Counted from the first letter of the whole stretch, positions 26,008 to 44,340 are shown. The stretch: 63,649 bases of DNA, filler included, from Octopus bimaculoides (GCF_001194135.2; 6 parts of 6 records of this genome joined end to end with filler, not necessarily neighbours in it), one strand, 5' to 3'. Notes: generated from the sequence alone by a model not told the origin. Numbers and translations are program-made.

Positions 26008-26235
26008 AGGCAGCGAGGTGGCAGAATTGTTAGCACGCTGGACGAAATGCTTAGCGGTATTTCGTCCATCTTTATGTTCCGAGTTCAAATTCCGCCAAGG
26101 TCGACTTTACCTTTCATCCTTTCGGGGTCGATAAATTAAGTACCAGTTGCGTATTAGGGTCGATCTAATTGACTGGCCTCTCCCCGCAAATTTCAGGCCT
26201 TGTGCCTATAGTTGAAAGGATTATTATTATTATCA
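26008..26235 (+). mobile_element. SINE family A, full length, (ATT)n tail
   Basis: ggcagcgaggtggcagaattgttagc..tttcaggccttgtgcctatagttgaaaggattattattat. Confidence 0.92.
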
Positions 26236-26781
26236 TAATTCATAAACAGAAAAGAAAAGAATCCTAACATCGGGCTACAACAAGTAGCCTTAGATGCCAA
26301 GGACCTTCCTATTGGGTTACAGCAAGTAACCTTAGATGTCAAGAACCCTCCTAAGTATCCTAGCTGTTTTCTGCAGCTGTACTAACCTGGGTTTTATGCC
26401 TATTTCCTCTATCCATCTGTTCAGATTTTTAGGGATAGATCGCAATGTACCTATAACTACTGGGATACAGTTTACCCGTACTTTCCATAATCACTGTAAT
26501 TCAATAGCGCAGTCCTGGTACTTTGCTATTTTTTTTATATACTTCTCATATTAATTTTTTCCTCATTTGGGACTGTAAAGTCAATTATCTGGCACTTTCT
26601 AGTCTCTTTATCTACTACTACTTAATCAGGCCTTCTAGCTTCTATTACCCTGTCAGTCTGAATGTTAAAGTCCCACAACATCTTATATTTCTTACTTTCT
26701 AGTACTTTATTAGGTTCATGTTCATACAATTTATCAGTATGTTCAAATCCTAGCTTTCTACAAAGTTCCCAATGGATTGCT
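26236..26781 (-). mobile_element. R4/Dong-like non-LTR retrotransposon, 5'-truncated copy 1 (RLE domain plus 3' UTR)
   Basis: AIHWELCRKLGFEHTDKLYEHEPNKVLESKKYKMLWDFNIQTDRVIEARRPD*VVVDKETRKCQIIDFTVP..KYQDCAIELQ*LWKVRVNCIPVVIG..KTARILRRVLDI*: PD-(D/E)xK restriction-like endonuclease C-terminus. The 3' end joins (AAT)n. Confidence 0.88.
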
Positions 26782-26939
26782 CTCCCTTCGCCCGTCGCTA
26801 CGTTCTGAGTTCCAGTTCCGCCAAGGTTGACTTTGCTTTCATCCTCTCGGGCTTGGATTGACATAATCGACAAGTCCCCTCCCCACAAATTTCAGGCCTT
26901 GTGTCTATAGTAGAAAGAATTATTATTATTATTATTATT
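26782..26939 (+). mobile_element. 5'-truncated SINE family A with (ATT)n tail
   Basis: ttcgcccgtcgctacgttctgagttcc..ggccttgtgtctatagtagaaagaattattatt. Confidence 0.88.
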
Positions 26940-27932
26940 TTATGTTTGACTTTTGTTTTGCATTTGTACAAGTTGGATCCAAGTCTCACCCAGAGACCTC
27001 AAGAGACAACAAGTTAGAAGTTCATGTAGGTGTTATGCCTAGGGTACCATATATTTGGATTTGTACAGTTTTGTTCAAGTGAATGTTTAAGAAACCATAA
27101 GAAAATTATGTGTTTGCTTTAAAANNNNNNNNNNNNNNNNNNNNNNNNNNNNNNNNNNNNNNNNNNNNNNNNNNNNNNNNNNNNNNNNNNNNNNNNNNNN
27201 NNNNNNNNNNNNNNNNNNNNNNNNNNNNNNNNNNNNNNNNNNNNNNNNNNNNNNNNNNNNNNNNNNNNNNNNNNNNNNNNNNNNNNNNNNNNNNNNNNNN
27301 NNNNNNNNNNNNNNNNNNNNNNNNNNNNNNNNNNNNNNNNNNNNNNNNNNNNNNNNNNNNNNNNNNNNNNNNNNNNNNNNNNNNNNNNNNNNNNNNNNNN
27401 NNNNNNNNNNNNNNNNNNNNNNNNNNNNNNNNNNNNNNNNNNNNNNNNNNNNNNNNNNNNNNNNNNNNNNNNNNNNNNNNNNNNNNNNNNNNNNNNNNNN
27501 NNNNNNNNNNNNNNNNNNNNNNNNNNNNNNNNNNNNNNNNNNNNNNNNNNNNNNNNNNNNNNNNNNNNNNNNNNNNNNNNNNNNNNNNNNNNNNNNNNNN
27601 NNNNNNNNNNNNNNNNNNNNNNNNNNNNNNNNNNNNNNNNNNNNNNNNNNNNNNNNNNNNNNNNNNNNNNNNNNNNNNNNNNNNNNNNNNNNNNNNNNNN
27701 NNNNNNNNNNNNNNNNNNNNNNNNNNNNTCCTTCATGATCTTTGACAACTATATCTGGTCTATTTGCCTTAATTTCTCTATCTGTGTGTATTGGCATATC
27801 CCAGAGTATGGTTGCTTTCTCGTTTTCTGTGACCTTTTCTGGCGTGTGTTTATACCATCTTTTTTCTGTTGCTATTCCATAATGTTGGCATAGCTTCCAG
27901 TGTATATAGGTCCCAGCTCTGTCGTGTCTGTG
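26940..27932 (-). mobile_element. R4/Dong-like copy 2 (gap in middle), flanked on both sides by (AAT)n
   Basis: HRHDRAGTYIHWKLCQHYGIATEKRWYKHTPEKVTENEKATILWDMPIHTDREIKANRPDIVVKDHE at 27729-27932; putative 3' UTR at 26940-27124. Continuity across the gap is assumed. Confidence 0.82.
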
Positions 27933-27933
27933 A

Positions 27934-28007
<74 letters not shown>

Positions 28008-28008
<1 letters not shown>

Positions 28009-28168
28009 TCGCTTGTCACGTTCTGAGTTCAAATTCCGCCGAGGTCGAATTTACTTTTCATCTTTTCGGGGTTGGTAAAATAAATACATCGGGGTCGATG
28101 TAATTGACTAGTGCTCTCCCTCAGGATTTCAGGACTTGTGCCTTCAGTAGAAAGGATTATTATTATTA
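28008..28168 (+). mobile_element. 5'-truncated SINE family A with (ATT)n tail
   Basis: ttcgcttgtcacgttctgagttcaaattccgccgaggtcga..cttgtgccttcagtagaaaggattattattatt. Confidence 0.88.
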
Positions 28169-29140
28169 CTGTTATTTACTTTTAATCTCAATGTTTGTAA
28201 CAATCACTCGCCGAGACACACCCAGCGTCCTAGGGCAAGTAAAGGATAAGAAATGTTACAGTATGGCTGAAAGTTTAGGGGAGGGGAAATGGTAGGGTCA
28301 GTAGCGAAATATCTCCATGTAATAGGACACACATTTAAACTGATAGGGTTTTTCTAAGGATGTGAGCAGTACTTGTTAGAACAATCTTTTGGATTTCTCT
28401 GAGACATGGTTCTCCTGGGATCTTATCTAGATGTTTCTTATTTCTTTATTGCCCGCAAGGGTCTACACACAGAGGGGACAAACAAGGACAGACAAAAGGA
28501 TTAAGTCGATTACATCGACCCCAGTGCGTAACTGGTACTTAATTCATCGACCCTGAAAGGATGAAAGGCAAAGTGTACCTCGGCGGAATTTGAACTCAGG
28601 ACGTAAAGACAGACGAAATACCGCTAAGCATTTCGTCCGGTGTGCTAACGTTTCTGCCAGCTAGCCGTCTTATCTAGATGTTTCTGACATCCCTTTTTAT
28701 TATACCTAGGGCACCTATAATAACAAGAACAGTTCTTGCTTTAAAATTACACATCTTTTGTATTTCAATTTCCAGGTCTTTATATTTATTTAATTTGTCA
28801 AATTCCTTTGCAGATATATTTTCATCAGTGGGACCACTTACATCTATTAATTTACAAGTATTCTCTTCCCTGTCTTTAATAATTATGTCTGGTCGATTAG
28901 CCTGGATCGTTCTGTCGGTGTTGACTGTAAAATCCCAGAGGATAGTGACATTTTTACTTTCAGTAAACAGGAGTACCGATTTTATAGTGATTACATGTTT
29001 TCCAATGTAAATACTGTCCTACCCTATCGTGGCGATTTTTGTATTCGTTTGGTGTCGGCACAGGACATCCCAAAAAGATGTGGTCTATTGTTTCGTCAAA
29101 TGTGTCGCAGAATCTGCATTTAGGGTCAGGCAAATTTCCA
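28169..29140 (-). mobile_element. R4/Dong-like copy 3 (CCHC knuckle, RLE, 3' UTR), interrupted by a SINE
   Basis: PDPKCRFCDTFDETIDHIFLGC..EYKNRHDRVGQYLHWKTC (CCHC) then TILWDFTVNTDRTIQANRPDIIIKD..KYKDLEIEI..IIGALG. After excising the SINE: GCQKHLDKIPGEPCLREIQKIVLTSTAHILRKTLSV*. Confidence 0.9.
28439..28667 (-). mobile_element. SINE family A with perfect 18-bp target-site duplication
   Basis: TCTTATCTAGATGTTTCT at 28421-28438 and 28668-28685. Confidence 0.95.
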
Positions 29141-29144
29141 CTGC

Positions 29145-29720
29145 ATCACCTGTTACTGTTACCTGTTATCGTGTTACTGGGGTACGTGCAGCATTGTGCG
29201 TTCTTTTTTGCTGTTGGGAGTATGCAAACTCTTCCTGGTATTGTATTGCATCAGTTTTTTTTTTATGGAGTGTGAGTCAGTTGCGTGTGTAATGCGTTGG
29301 GTATGCGGCCTGCTGATAATAGTTTATTTTATTGGATATTTGCTATATAGAGTGTGTCTTGTTTTTGTGGATTGTTTCGTTTGAATTGTAGTGTCTTGTG
29401 TAGGATGTGGGCTGTTCCTAGCAGGGCTATTATTTGGATAGTGTGTAGTGTTGAGGATCCAGCTACAGCTTCTACGTTTTTGTTCATATGTTTTTTATCA
29501 TGCCCAGTGCTCTAGTATTGTTTTCGCCTTCATGCCCCATATCTTGAATATTTCAATTTCGAGGTCTTTGTACTTTGACAATTTCCCCACTTCTTTTTGG
29601 ACAATATTTTCATCAGAAGGTTTCTCTAGTATTTTTAGTGAAAATTTTAAAATCATCCATGTACAGAATATGGTTTACTGTTTGTCCATAGCATCTATAA
29701 CTCATGATGGTTTCATTTAA
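29145..29720 (-). mobile_element. R4/Dong-like copy 4, internally deleted (RT YMDD motif fused to RLE C-terminus)
   Basis: YGQTVNHILYMDDFKIFTKN joined to PSDENIVQKEVGKLSKYKDLEIEIFKIWGMKAKTI..ALGMIK..IQIIALLGTAHILHKTL, then a 3' UTR running into copy 3. Confidence 0.82.
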
Positions 29721-29789
29721 CTAGTTTTTTAACGAGGTCAGAGAAAGATAGAAAAGCAAGGGTGACAGAAAAATCACCCTGGAAAATCA

Positions 29790-29837
29790 ACTAGTCCCTC
29801 CTCCACAATTTCAGGCCTTGTGCTTATAGCAGAAAGG

Positions 29838-29888
<51 letters not shown>

Positions 29889-29889
29889 G
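29790..29889 (+). mobile_element. SINE family A 3' end with long (ATT)n tail
   Basis: caatttcaggccttgtgcttatagcagaaagg(att)n. Confidence 0.85.
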
Positions 29890-30874
29890 AAGAAAGTCTT
29901 TGAAACTTTTGAAATGTGAATGCTAAACTATTCTAGCAATAACTGGAACCATATCACGGTTTTGGCCAGTTGCTAACAGCTTTACTACTCGATACTCTAC
30001 GTAAATCTATCATACCATAGGATTATCATAAAGCTATGATAATTTTTTGTGTCTTATGTTTTGTCTTTGTTTCATTTTTTCCTTCCATTTATATATACTG
30101 ACTTCGAAGGAAGAGTAAACTGGGGATGCAGAATCAGCAACTCGGTTTTACTCCCCGGTTGAACGCTCGGTGGAGTGTTTTAATTCACATTTTAATGGGA
30201 AAGGAACTGACACATAATGCTCGATCTGCTAAAATATACATGTCTGGTAATTAATGACCTAAAAAAAAATTATACTCATTTTAGAACAGGGTTTCATATT
30301 GGAACAGATAGACCTTCTCTAGACGAATAGTCCTATGAAAACTAAAAAGCAGCATACAAATTGTAAAGTTTAATAAAATTAAATGGTTTTAAACTTTTTA
30401 ATTTGTTCAACATTATGGCGAAGAAAGTAAAAAATAATGGTTGTAAATTATCTTTTGTCATTTCCGTCATAAAGAGGCAGGATTAAACATTTTTCTCTAA
30501 TATTTGGGAAAAGTGAACTAGCATCAACTGAAGCGTGCAAGGGAGATAAATACAAATATATATTTCTCGATTACTTCCCTTACATTATTCAGGCTTCCAA
30601 TTTTGTTTTTAATTTTCATATTTTCAACTACAATTTTTTAATGCTAACATTCGTAGAGATATTTTCACTATACTCATTGCTATTGGAGTAAATTTCGATA
30701 TTTATGAATGAAACTAAAATTATATCACTGCTAATTTTACAACTCTCAAACATTTGAGAACATTATTTCATTAGCCTGTGAAAACTATCATCATTGCTAA
30801 ATCTAAACAAATACAAAGAGTATACATGTTTTTGTTTTGCAAGTTTCTTGATGTGAAAACATGTGTTGAAACAG

Positions 30875-31155
30875 ATATTGTTATACTTGGGGATGGTCTA
30901 TCTTTTTTTTTTTTTTGCCAATTAAACACATGCCCTATTTATTTGATCTTCACTTTAGTTTTTATTCGTATTATTTTTAGTTTATACATTTTTTGAAAAT
31001 GGAATAAGCAGAACAAGACGAGACACATAGGGCAGAGAGTCACTGATGAGGTTACAGAATATGTGACGAAAGAACTTTGACAAACGTATAGTAAAAAAAT
31101 AATGCGAATAAAACCTAAAGTAAAGATCAAATAAATAGAGCGTGTGATTAATTGG
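30875..31155 (+). mobile_element. PLE-like hammerhead-bearing repeat (family H), copy 1, with inverted partial duplication of its 3' part
   Basis: 30995-31155 matches the reverse complement of 46160-46345. About 68 bp at 30920-30987 is an inverted copy of 31086-31152. Confidence 0.75.
31039..31081 (+). ncRNA. Minimal type-I hammerhead ribozyme motif, intact core
   Basis: gtca-CTGATGA-G-GTTAC-agaatat-GTGAC-GAAA-GAAC-TT-tgac: stem I gtca/tgac, stem II GTTAC/GTGAC, 2-bp stem III (AG/CT), NUH = CUU, predicted cut after 31077. Confidence 0.65.
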
Positions 31156-31305
31156 CAGGTAAGAAGCTTCCTTCCCAACCACATGGTTCCGGGTTCAGTC
31201 CCACTGCGTGGCACCTTGGTTATAGTCTTCTACTATAACCACGGACCGACCAAAACCTTGTGAGTGGATTTGGTCGACGAAAACTGAAAAAATCCCGTCG
31301 CATAT
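31156..31305 (+). mobile_element. SINE family B, 5' half
   Basis: ggtaagaagcttccttcccaaccacatggttccgggttcagtcccactgcgtggcaccttgg..aaaaatcccgtcg. Confidence 0.88.
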
Positions 31306-31327
31306 ATATATATATATATATATGTGA

Positions 31328-31622
31328 TTTACTCGTTTTACAAATCAATTTTCTCCATTGAAATTAACTAAAATATAATTAATCCGTTCCAGCCTCCCCA
31401 AAACCACTCAAAAATAATTTTTAATCGGTTTTAAAACAGTAAAGGTGTAGTTACAAGTAAAATGATAATTATAAAAAAGAGAATGCACAAGGAATATGTA
31501 AACTGGTTTTATTAACTGAATTACCTTAAAGATGGACGATTTGTGTGCTGGTACTGCGGATTTCCGCACGTACTTCAAGCCAAAAATTCGCACGAGCCTC
31601 GGCTCGTACAAAAAATTACTCG
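31328..31622 (+). mobile_element. Possible non-autonomous Helitron-like element (3' hairpin)
   Basis: Perfect hairpin acgagcc-tc-ggctcgt (31592-31607) lies 11 nt upstream of CTCG|T, one mismatch from the Helitron CTRR end. The 5' boundary is uncertain. Confidence 0.45.
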
Positions 31623-31639
31623 TACTGTGAGATTCTACT

Positions 31640-31922
31640 GTACTAGGCTTACAAAGAATAAGCCCTGGGGTCGATTTGTTCGACTAACACACTTTAGAGC
31701 GGTGGACCAGCATAGCTGCAGTCAAATGACTGAAACAAGTAAAAGGAGAAAAGTGTGGTAATTAGCTTGCATACCAACCACATGGTTTCGGGTTCAGTCC
31801 CACTGCGTGGCACCTTGGGCAAGTGTCTTCTACTATAGCCTCGGGCCGACCAAAGCCTTCTGAGTGGATTTGGTAGACGGAAACTGAAAGAAACCCGTGG
31901 TATATATATGTATATATATATA

Positions 31923-31966
<44 letters not shown>

Positions 31967-32170
31967 NNNNNNNNNNCCCCCCCCCAATATCGCTTGACAA
32001 CCGATGCTGGTGTGTTTACGTCCCTGTAACTTAGCGGTTCAGCAAAAGAGACCGATAGAATAAGTACTAGGCTTACAAAGAATAAGTCCTGGGGTCGATT
32101 TGCTCGACTAAAGGCGGTGCTCCAGCATGGCCACAGTCAAATGACTGAAACAAGTAAAAGAGTAAAAGAG
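31640..32170 (+). mobile_element. SINE family B 3' fragment followed by a near full-length SINE family B
   Basis: 3' module at 31640-31745; head gtgtggtaattagcttgc at ~31753 through internal (TG)n and the tail gtaaaagagtaaaagag at 32155-32170. Confidence 0.92.
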
Positions 32171-32559
32171 TATCCCAGAATATTGATTATAAATTCAAAC
32201 TTGGTGGAAACTATCAAGTCGAGTACACAATACCTGCGTATCTGGTGGAGTGAAAAGCGATATTTATAGCTCAAGTGTCAGAAATGCCTTGTAATCATGG
32301 GGCTTGTAAGAATGACGTAACAAATTTTATTTACCAAGTTATATATTCTCGTAATCACTTTGTTATCGGCATATGTGCATTAATTCTCTCAAATAATCAA
32401 ACGATTATCCCCTCTAGGTGAGACTGTCAACCTCATTCTTCGGTACATAGACAACAAAAAGAAATCATAAAACTTGATCGTGAAGCATTAACATGTTTCC
32501 TCAAAATCCATTTAGCAGCAGCATCAGCAACTACAGCAGCAGCAGTAGAGGCAGCAATA

Positions 32560-32738
32560 ATGATTTTCTGACTTTGAACGGAAAAGGCGAGATCCTTGTT
32601 CTAGTATTTTGTTTTATTGATCTCCCAGGCGGAAAATGAAAGATATAGTTTGCCTCAGCGACATTAGGACACAGGATATAAAGTGCTGGAAGAAAAACTG
32701 CAAGAATTTTGCCCAGCACGCTAACCATTTTGCCATTA

Positions 32739-32813
<75 letters not shown>

Positions 32814-32816
32814 TGA
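32560..32816 (-). mobile_element. Degenerate SINE family A adjoining a (TAC)n tract
   Basis: ttttgcccagcacgctaaccattttgcca is the reverse complement of the head; (TAC)n at ~32737-32814. Confidence 0.65.
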
Positions 32817-32817
32817 T

Positions 32818-33320
32818 TGAGTGAGAGAACAGTGCATGCCATCACAGTGACACTGGGATAAAACATACGAAGCCCAGTATACCCATCATGACTACCCGTT
32901 TGATGAGGATACACCAGTCACATGCATCACAACCATATGTGCGCGACATGGTGATTTTATATCAAGACAAACAGCGCATGATCTTGCAGGTGGGGCCCAG
33001 TTAAAATTTTCTTCGGGTCGAGTAGCCCATCCCGTTCAAAAGGTCCCTGAATAAGGGTTGTTTAAAGATGTTGAACGAAACACCCATGTTTCCAAAGGTG
33101 AATTATCCAAACCCCAAAGAATTCCTCTCAACACACGACTATAAATGCTCTCCCGCTATTTCTGCTCGTGATCAGAGATACACATATCGTCACACACCAA
33201 GCGACATGCTCAACTGGTTAAGCTCAAACAACTGACAAGCAAATCTATTGGAATCTATTGGAATTGAGCACAATATTTACTGTAGCCCATCATTTACACC
33301 AAGACAAAACAATGTGCATG
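32818..33320. repeat. Probable interspersed repeat of unknown class
   Basis: GC-richer, non-coding 500-bp block bounded by microsatellites. I recall it as an abundant octopus repeat, but there is no second copy in this window. Confidence 0.35.
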
Positions 33321-33343
33321 ATATTATTATTATTATTATTATT

Positions 33344-33718
33344 CAGTAGTTTTATTTTTATAACGTGCTTTCACTTCACTACCGAGCGCAGCTCTGTGCG
33401 CCTTGGGTATGTGCTGTGGTTTGCTGTGGTGCTCTTATGTTTACTGTATTGAAAGTGTTTTTCGTAGAATGTGTGCAGTACCCAGTAGTGCAATTTTCTG
33501 TATGTTATATATATTTGTAAGTCCTGGTGTTTTTGTTATGTATTTGTCTGAATATTTTTTTATTATACCTAAGGCACCTACTATGATAGGAATTGTTTCT
33601 GTTTTTAGATTCCACATTCGAGTTATCTCTATTTCCAGGTCTTTGTATTTTGAAAGTTTTTCCATTTCTTTTAGAGAAACGTTGTCATCTGCTGGTATTG
33701 AAACATCAATTAGAAGGC
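33344..33718 (-). mobile_element. R4/Dong-like copy 5, cleanly embedded in (AAT)n
   Basis: (AAT)n-SLLIDVSIPADDNVSLKEMEKLSKYKDLEIEITRMWNLKTETIPIIVGALGIIKKYSDKYITKTPGLTNIYNIQKIALLGTAHILRKTLSIQ*-3' UTR-(AAT)n; frame uninterrupted. Confidence 0.92.
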
Positions 33719-33758
<40 letters not shown>

Positions 33759-33759
<1 letters not shown>

Positions 33760-34617
33760 GGCGAGCTGACAGAATCGTTAGCACGCCAGGCGAAATGCTT
33801 AGCGGTATTTCGTCTGCTCCTACATTCTGAGTTCAGGGTCGATTAAATCAGTACCAGTTACGCACTGGGTCGATGTAATCGATTTAATCCCCTCCCTCAT
33901 GCTACCCTTGTGGCAAAATTTGAAATCATTATCATTATCATTATTATTATTCGGTGAATTGGCAGAATCGTTAGCACGCCAGGTGAAATGCTTAGAGATA
34001 TTTCGTTTGCCACTACGTTCTGAGTTCAAATTCCACAAAGGCGACTTTACCTTTCATCCTTTCGGGTTCGATAAATTAAGTACCAGTTGAGTACTGGAGT
34101 CGATGTTATCGACTATTCCCCTTCCCCAAATTTCAGGCCTTGTGCCTATAGTAGAAAGGATTATCGTCATTATTATTATTCGGCGAGCTGGCAGAATCGT
34201 TAGCACGTCGGGTGAAATGCATAGCTGTATTTCGTTTGTCTTCACGTTCTGAGTTCAAATGCTGTCGGGGTCGACTTCGCCTTTCATATCTTCCGGGTCG
34301 ATAAAATAAATACAAGGAGCGCACTGGGGTGGATGTAATCAACTATCCTCCTCCCCCAAATTTCAGGCCTTGTGCCTATAGTAGAAAGGATTATCATCAT
34401 CATCAGTATTATTATTCAGCAGAATCGTTAGCACGCTGGGCGAAAAGCTTAGCGGTATTTCGTCCGCCGCTACGTTCTGAGTTCAAATTCCGCCAAGGTC
34501 GACTTTACCTTTCATCCATTCGGGGTCGATAAACTAAGTACCAGTTGAACACAGGTGTCGATGTAATCGACATATCCCATCCGCCAAAATGGTTGCCGTT
34601 GTGGCAAAATTTGAAAC

Positions 34618-34681
<64 letters not shown>

Positions 34682-34760
34682 GCTGTTGCTGTTGTTGTTG
34701 TTGTTGTTGTTCTTGTTCTTGTTATTGTTATTGTTATTGTTATTATTATTATTATTGTTA

Positions 34761-34798
<38 letters not shown>

Positions 34799-35632
34799 GT
34801 TATTGTTATTNNNNNNNNNNNNNNNNNNNNNNNNNNNNNNNNNNNNNNNNNNNNNNNNNNNNNNNNNNNNNNNNNNNNNNNNNNNNNNNNNNNNNNNNNN
34901 NNNNNNNNNNNNNNNNNNNNNNNNNNNNNNNNNNNNNNNNNNNNNNNNNNNNNNNNNNNNNNNNNNNNNNNNNNNNNNNNNNNNNNNNNNNNNNNNNNNN
35001 NNNNNNNNNNNNNNNNNNNNNNNNNNNNNNNNNNNNNNNNNNNNNNNNNNNNNNNNNNNNNNNNNNNNNNNNNNNNNNNNNNNNNNNNNNNNNNNNNNNN
35101 NNNNNNNNNNNNNNNNNNNNNNNNNNNNNNNNNNNNNNNNNNNNNNNNNNNNNNNNNNNNNNNNNNNNNNNNNNNNNNNNNNNNNNNNNNNNNNNNNNNN
35201 NNNNNNNNNNNNNNNNNNNNNNNNNNNNNNNNNNNNNNNNNNNNNNNNNNNNNNNNNNNNNNNNNNNNNNNNNNNNNNNNNNNNNNNNNNNNNNNNNNNN
35301 NNNNNNNNNNNNNNNNNNNNNNNNNNNNNNNNNNNNNNNNNNNNNNNNNNNNNNNNNNNNNNNNNNNNNNNNNNNNNNNNNNNNNNNNNNNNNNNNNNNN
35401 NNNNNNNNNNNNNNNNNNNNNNNNNNNNNNNNNNNNNNNNNNNAATCGTTAGCAGGGTGGGAAAAATGCTTAGCGGCATTTCGTCCGTCTTGGCGTTCTG
35501 AGTTCAAATTCGGCCGAGGTTGACTTCACCTTTCTTCTCGAAGTCGCTAAAATAAGTTGACTACTGGGGCCAATGTAATCGACCTTTCTCCTCCCCCGAA
35601 ATTGGTGGCCTTGTGCCAAAATTTGAAACCAC

Positions 35633-35687
<55 letters not shown>

Positions 35688-36160
35688 GTTGTTGTTGTTG
35701 TTGTTGTTGCTGCTTTTGTTGTTGCTGTTGTTGTTATTGTTGTTGTTATTAGCTGGTGGGATCCTTAACCTGTCGGACAAAATGCTTTACTACGTTCTGA
35801 TTTCAATTTACTGCAGAGGTCGGCCTGGCATTTCATCCTTCCGCGGTCGATGAAATAAGTACCAGTTGAGCACTGGGAGTTGATATAATCGACTAACCCC
35901 ACCTCCTCACAAATTTAGTAGAAAGATTATTATTATTAGGCAGCGAGCCGGCAGATTCTTTATCGCGCCGGGGAAAATGCTTAGTGGCATTTCGCTCGTC
36001 TTTGCGTTCTGACTTCAAATTCCGCCAAGGTGGACTTTGCCTGTCATCTTTTCGGGGTCGATGGAATAAGCACCAGTTGCGCACTGGGGTCGATGTAATT
36101 GACTAGCACCCTCCCTGAAAGTTTCAGACCTTGTGCCTATAGCAGAAAGGATTATTATTA
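33759..36160 (+). mobile_element. Head-to-tail array of about 7 SINE family A copies separated by (ATT)n/(GTT)n
   Basis: Heads at about 33759, 33951, 34181, 34418, 35444, 35750 and 35938. Each copy ends in ..gtagaaagg(att)n or ..aaaatttgaaa..(att)n. Confidence 0.92.
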
Positions 36161-37779: not shown

Positions 37780-38895
37780 CTACCCATAGAAAAGCAGCAA
37801 CCATCGATTACACAAACGTGGCATCAATCATAGATAAAATGAACCTAAACAGGTACGGGTGGATTCCTTGCAATTCTCTCGAAAACATGCAAAGTAACTC
37901 TAGAAAACTCCAGTTATTATTCGAAAGCTTCTTTGCAAGTAGTAAGCTCTTCAAAAAGCTGAAGGGTGTCTTTGTATACCCCATTCATTAGGGAGGATCT
38001 AGATCAGAAACCTAAATTCCTGCCTTGCACTAGAAAAGTCATGAAATGAATTATAAAGGAACAATTGATTGAGTTCTTAAGGGAAAATTACTCGTTAAAT
38101 GACATTCAGTTTCTGGCCACGTTGAATTTGCTTCACTCAGCCTCTGCAGTAATACGATTAGAACCTTGGGCAGATTCTCAACAATCCAAATGTAGATGTG
38201 GATATCTCGACTTTGCGAAGGACTTTGTTGATCATGGAAACAATCACCGCCTACAAAGGAAAAGAAAGGCCCCAATGATATCAAAGACATGCAGGAAGAC
38301 AGCAATTAAATATACAAATGGCAGACGAAAACAATGCTGGACTGTTTCATTCCTTTGGCTGTCATCACTCAAATATATTCTTTTCTACTTTAGGCACAAG
38401 GCCCAAAATTTGTGGGGAGGGGACCAGTCGATTAGATAGACCCCAGTACGCAACTGGTATTTAATTTATCGACCCCGAAAGGATGAAAGGCAAAGTCGAT
38501 CTCGGCGGAATTTGAACTCAAAACGTAAGGGCAGACGAAATACCGCTAAGCATTTCGCCCGGCGTGCAAACGTTTCTGCCAGCTCGCCGCCTTCATCACT
38601 CAAATATATTGCAACCATGATACACGGGGAGGCTAGAAGGATTTCAGAGTTACGATCAGTGCGTGACAAGAGCATCAAACTGAGTAATGATACGCATATT
38701 GTTAATATGGCAAAAAGGTGCAGGCAACTGACTGACTGGATTTGGAAGACGCTTAAAATAAGAGAACAAGAAACCATGTTGGTTCTACGAAAGGCATTAG
38801 TTCTCAGTTGCTCGGATTATTTCTCTCAACTATGGCTTTCACATAATATCACAGTTACTGTAGAACTTTAAGTAATCCAACGCAGATTGTCAGTA
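37780..38895 (+). pseudogene. CR1-clade LINE reverse transcriptase relic, interrupted by a SINE
   Basis: LQLLFESFFAS; KGVFVYPIH*GGSR; KVMK*IIKEQLIEFLRENYSLNDIQF; YLDFAKDFVDH; then HIVNMAKRCRQLTDWIWKTLKIREQETMLVLRKALV..DYFSQLW..IQRR, matching CR1-type ORF2 motifs. Confidence 0.8.
38380..38592 (-). mobile_element. SINE family A with perfect 18-bp target-site duplication
   Basis: TCATCACTCAAATATATT at 38362-38379 and 38593-38610. Confidence 0.95.
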
Positions 38896-44109: not shown

Positions 44110-44340
44110 CGGCGATCTGGCAGAAACGTTAGCACGCCGAGCGAAATACTTAGCGGTATTTCGTCTGCCGTTACGTTCTGAGTTAAAATTCCGCCGAGGT
44201 TGACTTTGCCTTTCATCCTTTCGGGGTCGATTAATTAAGTACCAGTTACACACTGGGGTCGATGTAATCGACTTAATCCCTTTGTCTGTCCTTGTTTGTC
44301 CCCTCTATGTTTAGCCCCTTGTGGGCAGTAAAGAAATAAG
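44110..44340 (+). mobile_element. SINE family A, full length (long-tail subtype)
   Basis: Nearly identical to 4229-4462. Confidence 0.94.

What the first reader, a model, noticed from the sequence alone, without database searches (positions are those of the whole stretch)
26008..33760. Five divergent R4/Dong-like elements stacked in SINE (ATT)n tails: a SINE may manufacture target sites for a microsatellite-specific retrotransposon
Seen: five minus-strand RLE-type fragments (26236-26781, 26940-27932, 28169-29140, 29145-29720, 33344-33718) within 7.5 kb and none elsewhere in the window. Copies 1-3 end exactly in the (ATT)n tail of a plus-strand family A SINE. Copies 2 and 5 have (AAT)n on both sides. 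Copy 4 ends at the 5' end of copy 3. All share one polarity relative to the microsatellite. Proteins and 3' UTRs differ strongly, so these are several subfamilies, not duplications. Established: Dong-group R4-clade elements target (TAA)n. Inference: SINE A seeds (ATT)n, Dong-like elements home into it, and SINEs insert back into Dong (28439), producing a self-reinforcing repeat hotspot.
Basis: partly seen in the sequence, partly recalled or inferred. Interest (0 to 1): 0.72.

Follow-up and report, generated by a model that had tools for sequence, protein, structure and literature searches.

The report
Dong-type LINE fragments in octopus SINE tails
Five dead, independently inserted copies of a known (TAA)n-seeking jumping gene (Dong/R4-type LINE) sit, all in one orientation, in the ATT-repeat tracts that follow copies of an octopus SINE; this is real and tidy, but it is what two already known behaviours predict.

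Summary
Five minus-strand, 5'-truncated, decayed fragments of an RLE-type LINE lie at 26.2-29.8 kb and 33.3-33.7 kb, and there are none elsewhere in the piece. They share only 30-65% amino-acid identity and have unrelated 3' UTRs, so they are separate insertions. Four of the five 3' ends join an (ATT)n tract directly. Three of those tracts are tails of plus-strand SINE copies. Copies 2 and 5 have the repeat on both sides.

Relatives in a sea anemone, a tunicate, a sea cucumber, a shrimp and an unnamed assembly all end in sense-strand (TAA)n. 5'-truncated relatives carry it on both sides. This is the published behaviour of Dong, and Dong-R4 LINEs are already catalogued in octopus.

Corrections:
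- Copy 4 runs to about 29790, keeps a reverse-transcriptase piece and has an internal deletion.
- Copy 2 cannot be proved continuous across the gap.
- Copy 5 is not in a SINE tail.
- The SINE inside copy 3 is a different subfamily, with an A-rich end and a 17-bp target duplication. It adds no (ATT)n.

In this piece 10 of 13 (ATT)n tracts follow a SINE 3' end, so "SINE tails supply targets" is supported locally. However, the SINE also lands in such tracts, and one solitary copy has no tail, so the direction of cause is open. A genome-wide test was not possible.

The parts
26009..26219 (+). SINE-A copy S1, full length (head with box-B-like GAGTTCAAATTCCGCC; 3' module ...CCTATAGTTGAAAGG)
   Evidence: blastn and MAFFT of SINE copies
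26220..26240 (.). (ATT)4 plus degenerate units, lying between the S1 3' end and the D1 3' end
26241..26789 (-). D1: Dong-like fragment, RLE aa 66-220 plus about 95-nt 3' UTR (42-bp tandem duplication at 26272-26353); several stops. Its 5' end meets the 5'-truncated S2 with at most 3 nt of overlap.
26787..26918 (+). SINE-A copy S2, 5'-truncated with an internal deletion
26919..26943 (.). (ATT)n tail of S2, which is also the 3' junction of D2
26944..27124 (-). Presumed 3' UTR of D2. Assigned by position only, with no detectable similarity to anything.
   Evidence: inference
27125..27728 (.). Assembly gap inside D2. About 280-300 nt of RLE coding sequence are expected to be missing.
27729..27932 (-). 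D2: RLE aa 60-127, 68 codons open
27934..28008 (.). (ATT)25 between the D2 5' end and the 5'-truncated S3
28009..28155 (+). SINE-A copy S3, 5'-truncated
28156..28168 (.). (ATT)4 tail of S3, which is also the 3' junction of D3
28169..29145 (-). D3: RLE aa 24-220 (CCHC knuckle, RHD, PD..D..K) plus about 160-nt UTR; one frameshift; interrupted by a SINE-B copy
28439..28668 (-). SINE subfamily B inserted in D3: A-rich 3' end, with a 17-bp target-site duplication CTTATCTAGATGTTTCT at 28422-28438 and 28669-28685
29146..29790 (-). D4: RT fragment (QGD...LYMDD) joined by an internal deletion at about 29620 to RLE aa 138-end, plus UTR ending in TAACAG-like units. Its 3' end abuts the D3 5' end. Its 5' end overlaps S4 in AATCAA.
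29785..29837 (+). SINE-A copy S4, last 50 nt or so only
29838..29888 (.). (ATT)17 tail of S4, followed by unique DNA
33322..33343 (.). (ATT)7 at the D5 3' end, preceded by unique DNA (no SINE)
33344..33718 (-). D5: RLE aa 130-220, open to the stop, plus about 100-nt UTR; 91% identical to a UniRef Octopus bimaculoides protein
33719..33758 (.). (ATT)13 between the D5 5' end and the full 5' end of SINE S5
33759..36150 (+). Head-to-tail stack of SINE-A/A2 copies (S5-S11), each followed by (ATT)n or (ATT)n(GTT)n. It contains a gap at 34811-35443.

Best explanation
This is a retroposon nest in an octopus genome, built on one polarised microsatellite, (ATT)n on the plus strand and (AAT)n on the minus strand.

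Plus-strand copies of a roughly 210-bp SINE (3' module ...CCTATAGTAGAAAGG) are each followed by (ATT)n and are stacked head to tail. Into the inter-SINE tracts, five different Dong-type (R4-clade-like) LINEs with a C-terminal restriction-like endonuclease (RLE) inserted independently.

Inferred mechanism, by analogy with R2:
1. The element's protein nicks the (TTA)n strand.
2. The (UAA)n end of its RNA pairs with that strand.
3. Reverse transcription starts there and usually aborts, leaving 5'-truncated copies.

The element's sense strand must therefore be the (TAA)n strand. Every copy is thus antiparallel to the SINE whose tail it uses, which explains the uniform polarity.

- Where some of the tract survived on the 5' side we see repeats on both sides (D2, D5).
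- Where the 5' joining deleted the rest of the tract and part of the next SINE we see direct 5'-to-5' Dong|SINE junctions with 3-6 nt of microhomology (D1|S2, D4|S4).
- D4 entered at, or was copied onto, the 5' end of D3.
- A SINE of another subfamily later hit D3 at random.

Shown: the identity, independence, truncation, junctions and polarity of the fragments, and the (TAA)n flanks of relatives. Inferred: the order of events, the strand that is nicked, and that SINE tails are the main source of targets.
For: - Five minus-strand RLE fragments and no others.
- R2 proteins are the only solved-structure matches, both for the RLE profile (E 2e-4, CCHC and PD..D..K regions aligned) and for a relative's RT (E 1e-26).
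- The fragments are mutually divergent, with unrelated UTRs.
- All 13 (ATT)n tracts of 4 or more units are ATT on the plus strand. 10 follow a SINE 3' end. 4 are followed by a Dong 3' end.
- Relatives in Exaiptasia, Styela, Holothuria, Penaeus and assembly ERZ25066843 all have sense (TAA)n 90-150 nt after the stop. The 5'-truncated copies L001, L002 and L013 have it at both junctions.
- Literature: Dong targets (TAA)n in insects, molluscs and cnidarians (PMC7998251, PMC3812793). Dong-R4 families are catalogued in O. vulgaris and O. bimaculoides (PMC13282606, PMC9115989).
- D5 is 91% identical to an O. bimaculoides UniRef protein.
- SINE-A copies in the nest are all plus strand and differ by about 20-25%, so they too are separate insertions.
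Against: - D4 has no clean (TAA)n at its 3' end.
- D1, D3 and D4 have no repeat at their 5' ends.
- D2's two halves are separated by an unread gap.
- No RT phylogeny with reference Dong, R4, HERO or NeSL sequences could be made, so clade placement rests on target, domain type and literature.
- The window alone cannot show whether the SINE makes the tract or lands in it. One solitary SINE-A has no tail at all.
- The sample is five insertions in one locus of a gapped short-read-style assembly.
Confidence: 0.8

Rival explanations
1. Cause runs the other way, or both ways. Dong brings or extends the (TAA)n as its own tail. SINE-A, whose RNA or partner LINE prefers (ATT)n, then homes into tracts that Dong made. 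Under this view the SINE is the guest, not the maker of targets.
For: - The long tracts lie at Dong 5' ends (75 and 40 bp) and are followed by SINE 5' ends.
- Relatives carry very long (TAA)n after their 3' ends, 245 bp in L001.
- A solitary SINE-A with an 18-bp target duplication has no ATT tail.
- S11 is flanked by about 12 bp of ATT on each side, like a target duplication of S10's tail.
- All SINE-A copies in the nest share one orientation.
Against: - SINE copies with long (ATT)n or (ATT)n(GTT)n tails and no Dong nearby exist: S4 with 51 bp followed by unique DNA, plus S8 and S9.
- The tracts between a SINE end and a Dong 3' end are the shortest, which would not be expected if Dong tails made them.
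Confidence: 0.3
2. The (AAT)n is only the LINE's own 3' tail, as in I elements, which end in TAA repeats. There is then no target specificity, and the nearness to SINE ends is coincidence or a general liking for AT-rich DNA.
For: LINEs that end in TAA repeats without targeting them are known (I element; PMC3747384). D1, D3 and D4 show the repeat on one side at most.
Against: - D2 and D5 here, and relatives L001, L002 and L013, have the repeat at the 5' junction as well.
- Three 3' ends coincide to the base with SINE tails that exist without Dong elsewhere.
- Published work assigns (TAA)n targeting to Dong (PMC7998251, PMC3812793).
Confidence: 0.07
3. One-event origin of the 5'-to-5' junctions. 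The RLE makes a double-strand break in (ATT)n. The ATT-strand end primes a Dong RNA and the AAT-strand end primes a SINE RNA with an (AUU)n tail. The two aborted cDNAs are then joined by microhomology. This would be twin priming with two different templates.
For: - There are two direct Dong 5'|SINE 5' junctions with 3-6 nt of overlap (26787-26789 and 29785-29790).
- All four Dong 5' ends not facing another Dong are followed by a SINE-A 5' end.
- The polarity of both elements is exactly what priming from the two ends would give.
Against: - Insertion of Dong into a pre-existing SINE-(ATT)n-SINE array, with a target deletion at the 5' junction, gives the same picture.
- D2 and D5 keep 75 and 40 bp of repeat between Dong and SINE.
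- S3 is 5'-truncated without touching a Dong.
- SINE-A moves on its own with 18-bp target duplications.
- There are only two cases.
Confidence: 0.07
4. Part of the arrangement is an assembly artefact. Reads were misjoined through (ATT)n tracts in a gapped scaffold, which would stack unrelated SINE-tail/Dong junctions.
For: - There are gaps at 27125-27728 and 34811-35443.
- Nearly every junction runs through low-complexity sequence.
- The long tracts (75, 51 and 40 bp) could hide misjoins.
Against: - The informative junctions (SINE end, 13-22 bp of ATT, Dong UTR) are short enough to be spanned by single reads.
- The direct junctions D1|S2, D3|D4 and D4|S4 contain no repeat.
- Each junction on its own shows the same rule, whatever the order of blocks.
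Confidence: 0.08
5. Segmental or tandem duplication of one SINE-(ATT)n-Dong unit.
For: There is a repeating block pattern, SINE-tail-Dong, three times in 3.7 kb.
Against: The Dong fragments share no UTR similarity and only 30-65% protein identity. They cover different parts of the ORF. The SINE copies are truncated at different points.
Confidence: 0.01

Closest known systems
Dong (Bombyx mori), DongAg and DongBg (Biomphalaria glabrata); R4 clade; catalogued as 'Dong-R4' LINEs in Octopus vulgaris and O. bimaculoides
   Same: - Single-ORF LINE with an R2-like RT and a C-terminal CCHC + PD..D..K endonuclease.
- The 3' UTR is followed by sense-strand (TAA)n.
- The repeat is present at both junctions of some copies.
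- 5' truncation is common.
- Such elements are present in molluscs and already listed for octopus (PMC7998251, PMC3812793, PMC13282606, PMC9115989).
   Different: - Only dead 3' fragments are present here.
- At least five mutually divergent lineages lie side by side.
- One copy (D4) lacks a clean (TAA)n at its 3' end.
- The RT tree and the N-terminal Myb-like region could not be examined.
R2 (Bombyx R2Bm, zebra finch R2Tg): target-primed reverse transcription by an RLE LINE
   Same: R2 is the only solved-structure relative of both the RT and the RLE regions. The same order of CCHC, RH and PD..D..K motifs is seen. R2's known variable 5' junctions and end-to-end template jumps would explain D1|S2, D4|S4 and D4-D3.
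   Different: R2 targets one site in 28S rDNA. Similarity to the window's RLE is weak (E 0.19 for a single sequence, 2e-4 for the profile). R2 has N-terminal zinc-finger/Myb domains that cannot be checked here.
Alu/L1: SINE tails as birthplaces of microsatellites and as preferred landing sites for further L1/Alu insertions
   Same: A SINE's 3' tail becomes a simple repeat that attracts further retroposition, giving clusters (reviewed in PMC3812793).
   Different: In Alu/L1 the tail is poly(A), the newcomer uses an APE endonuclease with loose TTTT/AA preference, and insertions are mostly in the same tail polarity. Here the newcomer is a microsatellite-specific RLE element and is strictly antiparallel to the SINE.
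RTE-derived microsatellite families (Lepidoptera), and the octopus RTE-2_OV with a microsatellite 3' UTR
   Same: The 3' ends of LINEs and SINEs generate families of microsatellites with shared flanks (PMC2887409). An octopus RTE has a microsatellite making up most of its 3' UTR (PMC9115989). This makes it a plausible partner for SINE-A, which makes 17-18-bp target duplications.
   Different: No RTE copy with the SINE-A 3' module was found or searched for here. The partner of SINE-A is unknown.
Twin priming of L1 (inversion/5'-truncation junctions)
   Same: Two cDNAs are primed from the two ends of one break and joined by microhomology. That geometry matches the 5'-to-5' Dong|SINE junctions.
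   Different: Twin priming uses one RNA. Here two unrelated RNAs would be needed, and the evidence is two junctions that a simple deletion also explains.

Membership tests
R4/Dong clade of RLE non-LTR retrotransposons | C-terminal CCHC knuckle followed by a PD-(D/E)XK restriction-like endonuclease | tested here: met
   D3 carries CxxC...HxxxxC, RHD, RPDI..D..K(Y)K. A profile of 28 homologues hits only the R2 C-terminal RLE in the PDB (E 2e-4). The single sequence gives E 0.19 with motifs aligned. Pfam has only a sub-threshold zf-RVT match.
R4/Dong clade of RLE non-LTR retrotransposons | Reverse transcriptase of the R2 group upstream of the RLE in one ORF | tested here: met
   In the window only D4 keeps an RT piece (QGD...LSPLLF...LYMDD). 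Relatives L001, L014 and L016 have RT and RLE in series. The relative's RT hits only R2 proteins in the PDB (E 1e-26) and Pfam RVT_1.
R4/Dong clade of RLE non-LTR retrotransposons | Dong subgroup: insertion into (TAA)n, sense strand = TAA strand, repeat at both junctions | tested here: met
   The 3' junction lies in (AAT)n for D1, D2, D3 and D5. Both junctions do so for D2 and D5. D4 is the exception. Relatives in 5 taxa show 3' (TAA)n in 6 of 6 loci, and both sides in L001, L002 and L013. One related lineage ends in (TAC)n instead.
R4/Dong clade of RLE non-LTR retrotransposons | RT phylogeny groups with Dong, R4 and Rex6 and not with R2, NeSL, CRE or HERO | not testable with these tools
   No reference sequences of the named clades could be fetched. 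The paper supplements looked at hold none, and Xiong & Eickbush 1993 is not held. HERO also has some microsatellite-specific families (PMC4640811), so this remains open.
R4/Dong clade of RLE non-LTR retrotransposons | N-terminus with a divergent Myb/SANT-like region and no zinc fingers | not testable with these tools
   All five window copies are 5'-truncated within or after the RT.
tRNA-derived SINE | Internal pol III promoter (A and B boxes) in a tRNA-like head | tested here: inconclusive
   A box-B-like GAGTTCAAATTCC and a box-A-like TTAGCACGC are conserved among copies. ARAGORN finds no tRNA, and Rfam gives no tRNA or SINE match.
tRNA-derived SINE | Short non-coding retroposon flanked by target-site duplications | tested here: met
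   There is an 18-bp duplication around 38380-38592 and a 17-bp duplication around 28439-28668. About 16 copies of roughly 210 bp occur in 26 kb.
tRNA-derived SINE | 3' module shared with a partner LINE | not tested
   Three alternative 3' modules were seen (A, A2, B), but no LINE with the same end was searched for.

The most novel reading that the evidence does not exclude
The direct 5'-to-5' Dong|SINE junctions (26787-26789 and 29785-29790) were each made in one event. The Dong endonuclease breaks both strands of (ATT)n. One end primes Dong RNA, and the other end primes a SINE RNA ending in (AUU)n. On this reading the SINE would parasitise the second-strand break of a microsatellite-specific RLE element, and the two elements would co-insert as antiparallel pairs.
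Probability: 0.06. Interest if true: 0.7.

Novelty: new member of a known kind. Interest (0 to 1): 0.3.

Why it matters
If it holds genome-wide, an abundant SINE would set the number and polarity of landing sites for a target-specific LINE. SINEs make up about 12% of the O. vulgaris genome according to PMC13282606. The result would be growing repeat nests kept away from genes. That is a neat case of one mobile element shaping the niche of another, and it would help explain how several Dong-R4 lineages persist side by side in octopus. It adds no new mechanism. Both halves are known: SINE tails become microsatellites, and Dong seeks (TAA)n. The practical value is for repeat annotation, because antiparallel SINE/Dong pairs and 5'-to-5' junctions should not be read as new composite elements.

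Tried and rejected
- Pfam names no RLE domain in the fragments. It gives only sub-threshold zf-RVT and chance hits.
- ARAGORN and Rfam do not recognise the SINE head. The Rfam hits in the piece are microsatellite noise.
- Exact look-up of the window's own 74-aa ORF found no contig. The closest octopus protein (P0123) has no contig on record, and P0121 sits on a 743-bp contig with no flank.
- Reference Dong/R4 sequences were not obtainable, so no phylogeny was built.
- Segmental duplication is rejected.
- SINE-A being mobilised by Dong through a shared tail is rejected. Its tail is (ATT)n in its own sense, the complement of Dong's (TAA)n, and solitary copies make 17-18-bp target duplications at non-repeat sites.
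- A C-terminal coding remnant at the gap edge of D2 was looked for. Only a doubtful 'KHII..S*' resemblance turned up.

Full report
**What the piece is.** The 26.4-kb piece (23702-50099) is repeat-rich animal DNA. One LINE fragment (D5) is 91% identical to a UniRef protein of Octopus bimaculoides. The source is therefore that octopus or a close relative.

**The SINE.**
- The dominant repeat is a SINE of about 210 bp, with roughly 16 copies.
- The copies share a head and body. A box-B-like GAGTTCAAATTCC is conserved, but ARAGORN and Rfam do not call a tRNA.
- There are three alternative 3' modules:
  - A ends ...CCTATAGTAGAAAGG followed by (ATT)n.
  - A2 ends ...CTTGTGGCAAAATTTGAAA followed by (ATT)n, often continuing as (GTT)n.
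  - B has an A-rich end.
- A solitary A copy (38380-38592, minus strand) is flanked by an 18-bp target duplication and has no ATT tail.
- A B copy (28439-28668) has a 17-bp duplication.
- The SINE therefore moves with a LINE that makes long staggered cuts, not with Dong.

**The observation.** tblastn with the fragments' own translations, and with an RT+RLE reference taken from a relative, finds five minus-strand matches and nothing else in the piece.

| Copy | Window position | Part of the reference covered | State |
|---|---|---|---|
| D1 | about 26241-26789 | RLE aa 66-220 + 3' UTR | several stops |
| D2 | 27729-27932 (plus 26944-27124, presumed UTR) | RLE aa 60-127, then the gap | open frame |
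| D3 | 28169-29145 | RLE aa 24-220 + UTR | one frameshift, split by a SINE-B |
| D4 | 29146 to about 29790 | RT aa about 150-202, then RLE aa 138-end + UTR | internal deletion at about 29620 |
| D5 | 33344-33718 | RLE aa 130-220 + UTR | open to the stop |

- Protein identity among the copies is 30-65%. DNA similarity is limited to short coding stretches at 71-82%. The 3' UTRs match nothing else.

**The gaps.**
- Gap 27125-27728 lies inside D2.
- The right flank is an open RLE frame.
- The 185-nt left flank has no recognisable coding or DNA similarity. It is assigned to D2 only because it lies between the gap and the (ATT)n, and because its length is close to the UTRs of the other copies and of relatives (about 90-245 nt).
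- If the two flanks are continuous, about 280-300 nt are missing, against 604 N written. Neither continuity nor frame can be tested.
- The 10-N gap at 31967-31976 is in an unrelated repeat.

**What the fragments are.**
- D3 shows CxxC...HxxxxC, RHD, RPDI...D...K(Y)K.
- A profile of 28 homologues matches only the C-terminal endonuclease region of R2 proteins among all solved structures (E 2e-4). The single sequence gives E 0.19 with the same motifs aligned.
- A relative's RT matches only R2 proteins (E 1e-26) and Pfam RVT_1.
- The C-terminal domain has hundreds of homologues across cnidarians, echinoderms, tunicates, crustaceans and insects.

**Flanks of relatives.**
- I fetched genomic loci for relatives from Exaiptasia, Styela, Holothuria, Penaeus and an unnamed ENA assembly.
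- In all six loci the stop codon is followed by a 90-150-nt UTR and then sense-strand (TAA)n.
- The 5'-truncated copies L001, L002 and L013 have (TAA)n at the 5' junction too.
- This is the published behaviour of Dong. Papers report (TAA)n as the target in insects, molluscs and cnidarians (PMC7998251) and list Dong, DongAg and the snail element DongBg (PMC3812793).
- Dong-R4 LINEs are already catalogued in octopus: five recently active families in O. vulgaris (PMC13282606) and a full-length Dong consensus in O. bimaculoides (PMC9115989).
- I could not build an RT tree against named reference elements. Placement in the R4 clade, rather than for example HERO (which also has some microsatellite-specific families, PMC4640811), rests on target, domain type and the literature.

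**Junctions and polarity.**
- All 13 tracts of (ATT) with 4 or more units in the piece are ATT on the plus strand.
- What precedes the tracts: 10 directly follow a SINE 3' end, two follow a Dong 5' end, and one follows unique DNA.
- What follows the tracts: four are followed by a Dong 3' end (D1, D2, D3, D5), five by a SINE 5' end, three by (GTT)n or a gap, and one by unique DNA.
- D1-D3 use SINE tails. D5 uses a tract with no SINE upstream.
- D2 and D5 keep 75 and 40 bp of the repeat at their 5' ends.
- The uniform minus orientation of the LINEs is the direct consequence of two things. The element's sense strand must be the (TAA)n strand, and all 12 SINE-A copies between 25.7 and 36.2 kb are plus-strand.

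**Three junctions that lack the repeat.**
- D1's 5' end meets the 5'-truncated S2 with at most 3 nt of overlap.
- D4's 5' end meets the last 50 nt or so of S4, overlapping in AATCAA.
- D4's 3' end, a degenerate TAACAG-like stretch, meets D3's 5' end.
- The simplest reading is that the Dongs entered the inter-SINE tracts of an existing SINE array. At D1 and D4 the 5' joining then removed the rest of the tract and part of the next SINE. Variable 5' junctions and end-to-end template jumps are established for R2 from my own knowledge, and they would cover D4-D3.
- A more exotic reading gives the same geometry: both ends of one endonuclease-made break prime a Dong RNA and a SINE RNA. It rests on two junctions, and I rate it at about 6%.

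- 'SINE A seeds (ATT)n and Dong homes into it' is supported locally, since 10 of 13 tracts follow SINE ends.
- Causality is not settled, for four reasons:
  - SINE-A 5' ends repeatedly abut (ATT)n.
  - S11 is flanked by about 12 bp of ATT on each side, like a target duplication of S10's tail.
  - The solitary copy has no tail.
  - Dong relatives carry very long (TAA)n of their own.
- So the SINE also lands in such tracts, and Dong may extend them.
- The specific evidence offered for self-reinforcement, the SINE at 28439, does not count. It is subfamily B, has an A-rich end and an ordinary 17-bp duplication, and brings no (ATT)n.
- Better evidence for growth of the nest is the head-to-tail stacking of diverged SINE-A/A2 copies (about 75-77% alike).

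**Verdict.**
- The elements and their target rule are known, including in this genus.
- The SINE-tail link is a sensible corollary that I did not find stated in the papers searched. It could not be tested genome-wide, because no further octopus loci could be retrieved.

Noticed in passing
L004-L012 (TARA metagenome scaffolds, protein P0159): A related RLE lineage has its 3' UTR followed by (TAC)n instead of (TAA)n. This may be a switch of microsatellite target within the group. Only the 3' side is visible, because the contigs end in the repeat.
   Followed up: partly
window 28439-28668 (-), 44112-44335 (+), 33900-33925, 34590-34617, 35610-35630: The SINE has one head and body but three alternative 3' modules: A and A2 with (ATT)n, and B with an A-rich end. 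This suggests module swapping between different LINE partners.
   Followed up: partly
window 38362-38610: A solitary minus-strand SINE-A copy has an 18-bp target-site duplication AATATATTTGAGTGATGA and no ATT tail at all.
   Followed up: yes
window 34618-34810 and 35634-35751: Compound (ATT)n(GTT)n microsatellites follow SINE-A2 copies. The first runs into the gap at 34811-35443.
   Followed up: no
window 31158-31325 / 31757-31925 and 31640-31756 / 32064-32171: A second, unrelated SINE-like family (GGTTCCGGGTTCAGTCCCACTGCGTGGCACC head) occurs in two copies with (AT)n/(TG)n stretches. The 10-N gap at 31967-31976 lies in one of them.
   Followed up: partly
window 30916-30991 and 31082-31157: An inverted repeat has 76-nt arms that are 86% complementary and 90 nt apart. 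It may be a MITE-like element.
   Followed up: no
window 26272-26353: There is a 42-bp tandem duplication (2 copies, 85% matching) inside the 3' UTR of D1.
   Followed up: no
window 26786, 27932, 33718, about 29620: The truncation points pair up: D2 at RLE aa 60 and D1 at aa 66; D5 at aa 130 and the D4 internal deletion rejoining at aa 138. These may be pause or break points of the template, but the numbers are too small to judge.
   Followed up: no
window 26220-26233, 26919-26939, 28156-28168, 33322-33343 versus 27934-28008, 33719-33758: The repeat left on the 3' side of each Dong is short (13-22 bp). The repeat on the 5' side, when present, is long (40 and 75 bp). This may say where in a tract the first nick falls.
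   Followed up: no
L001 5075-5531: In the unnamed ENA assembly, the (TAA)25 upstream of a Dong-like copy interrupts the C-terminal ORF of a different, APE-type LINE lying in the same orientation.
   Followed up: no
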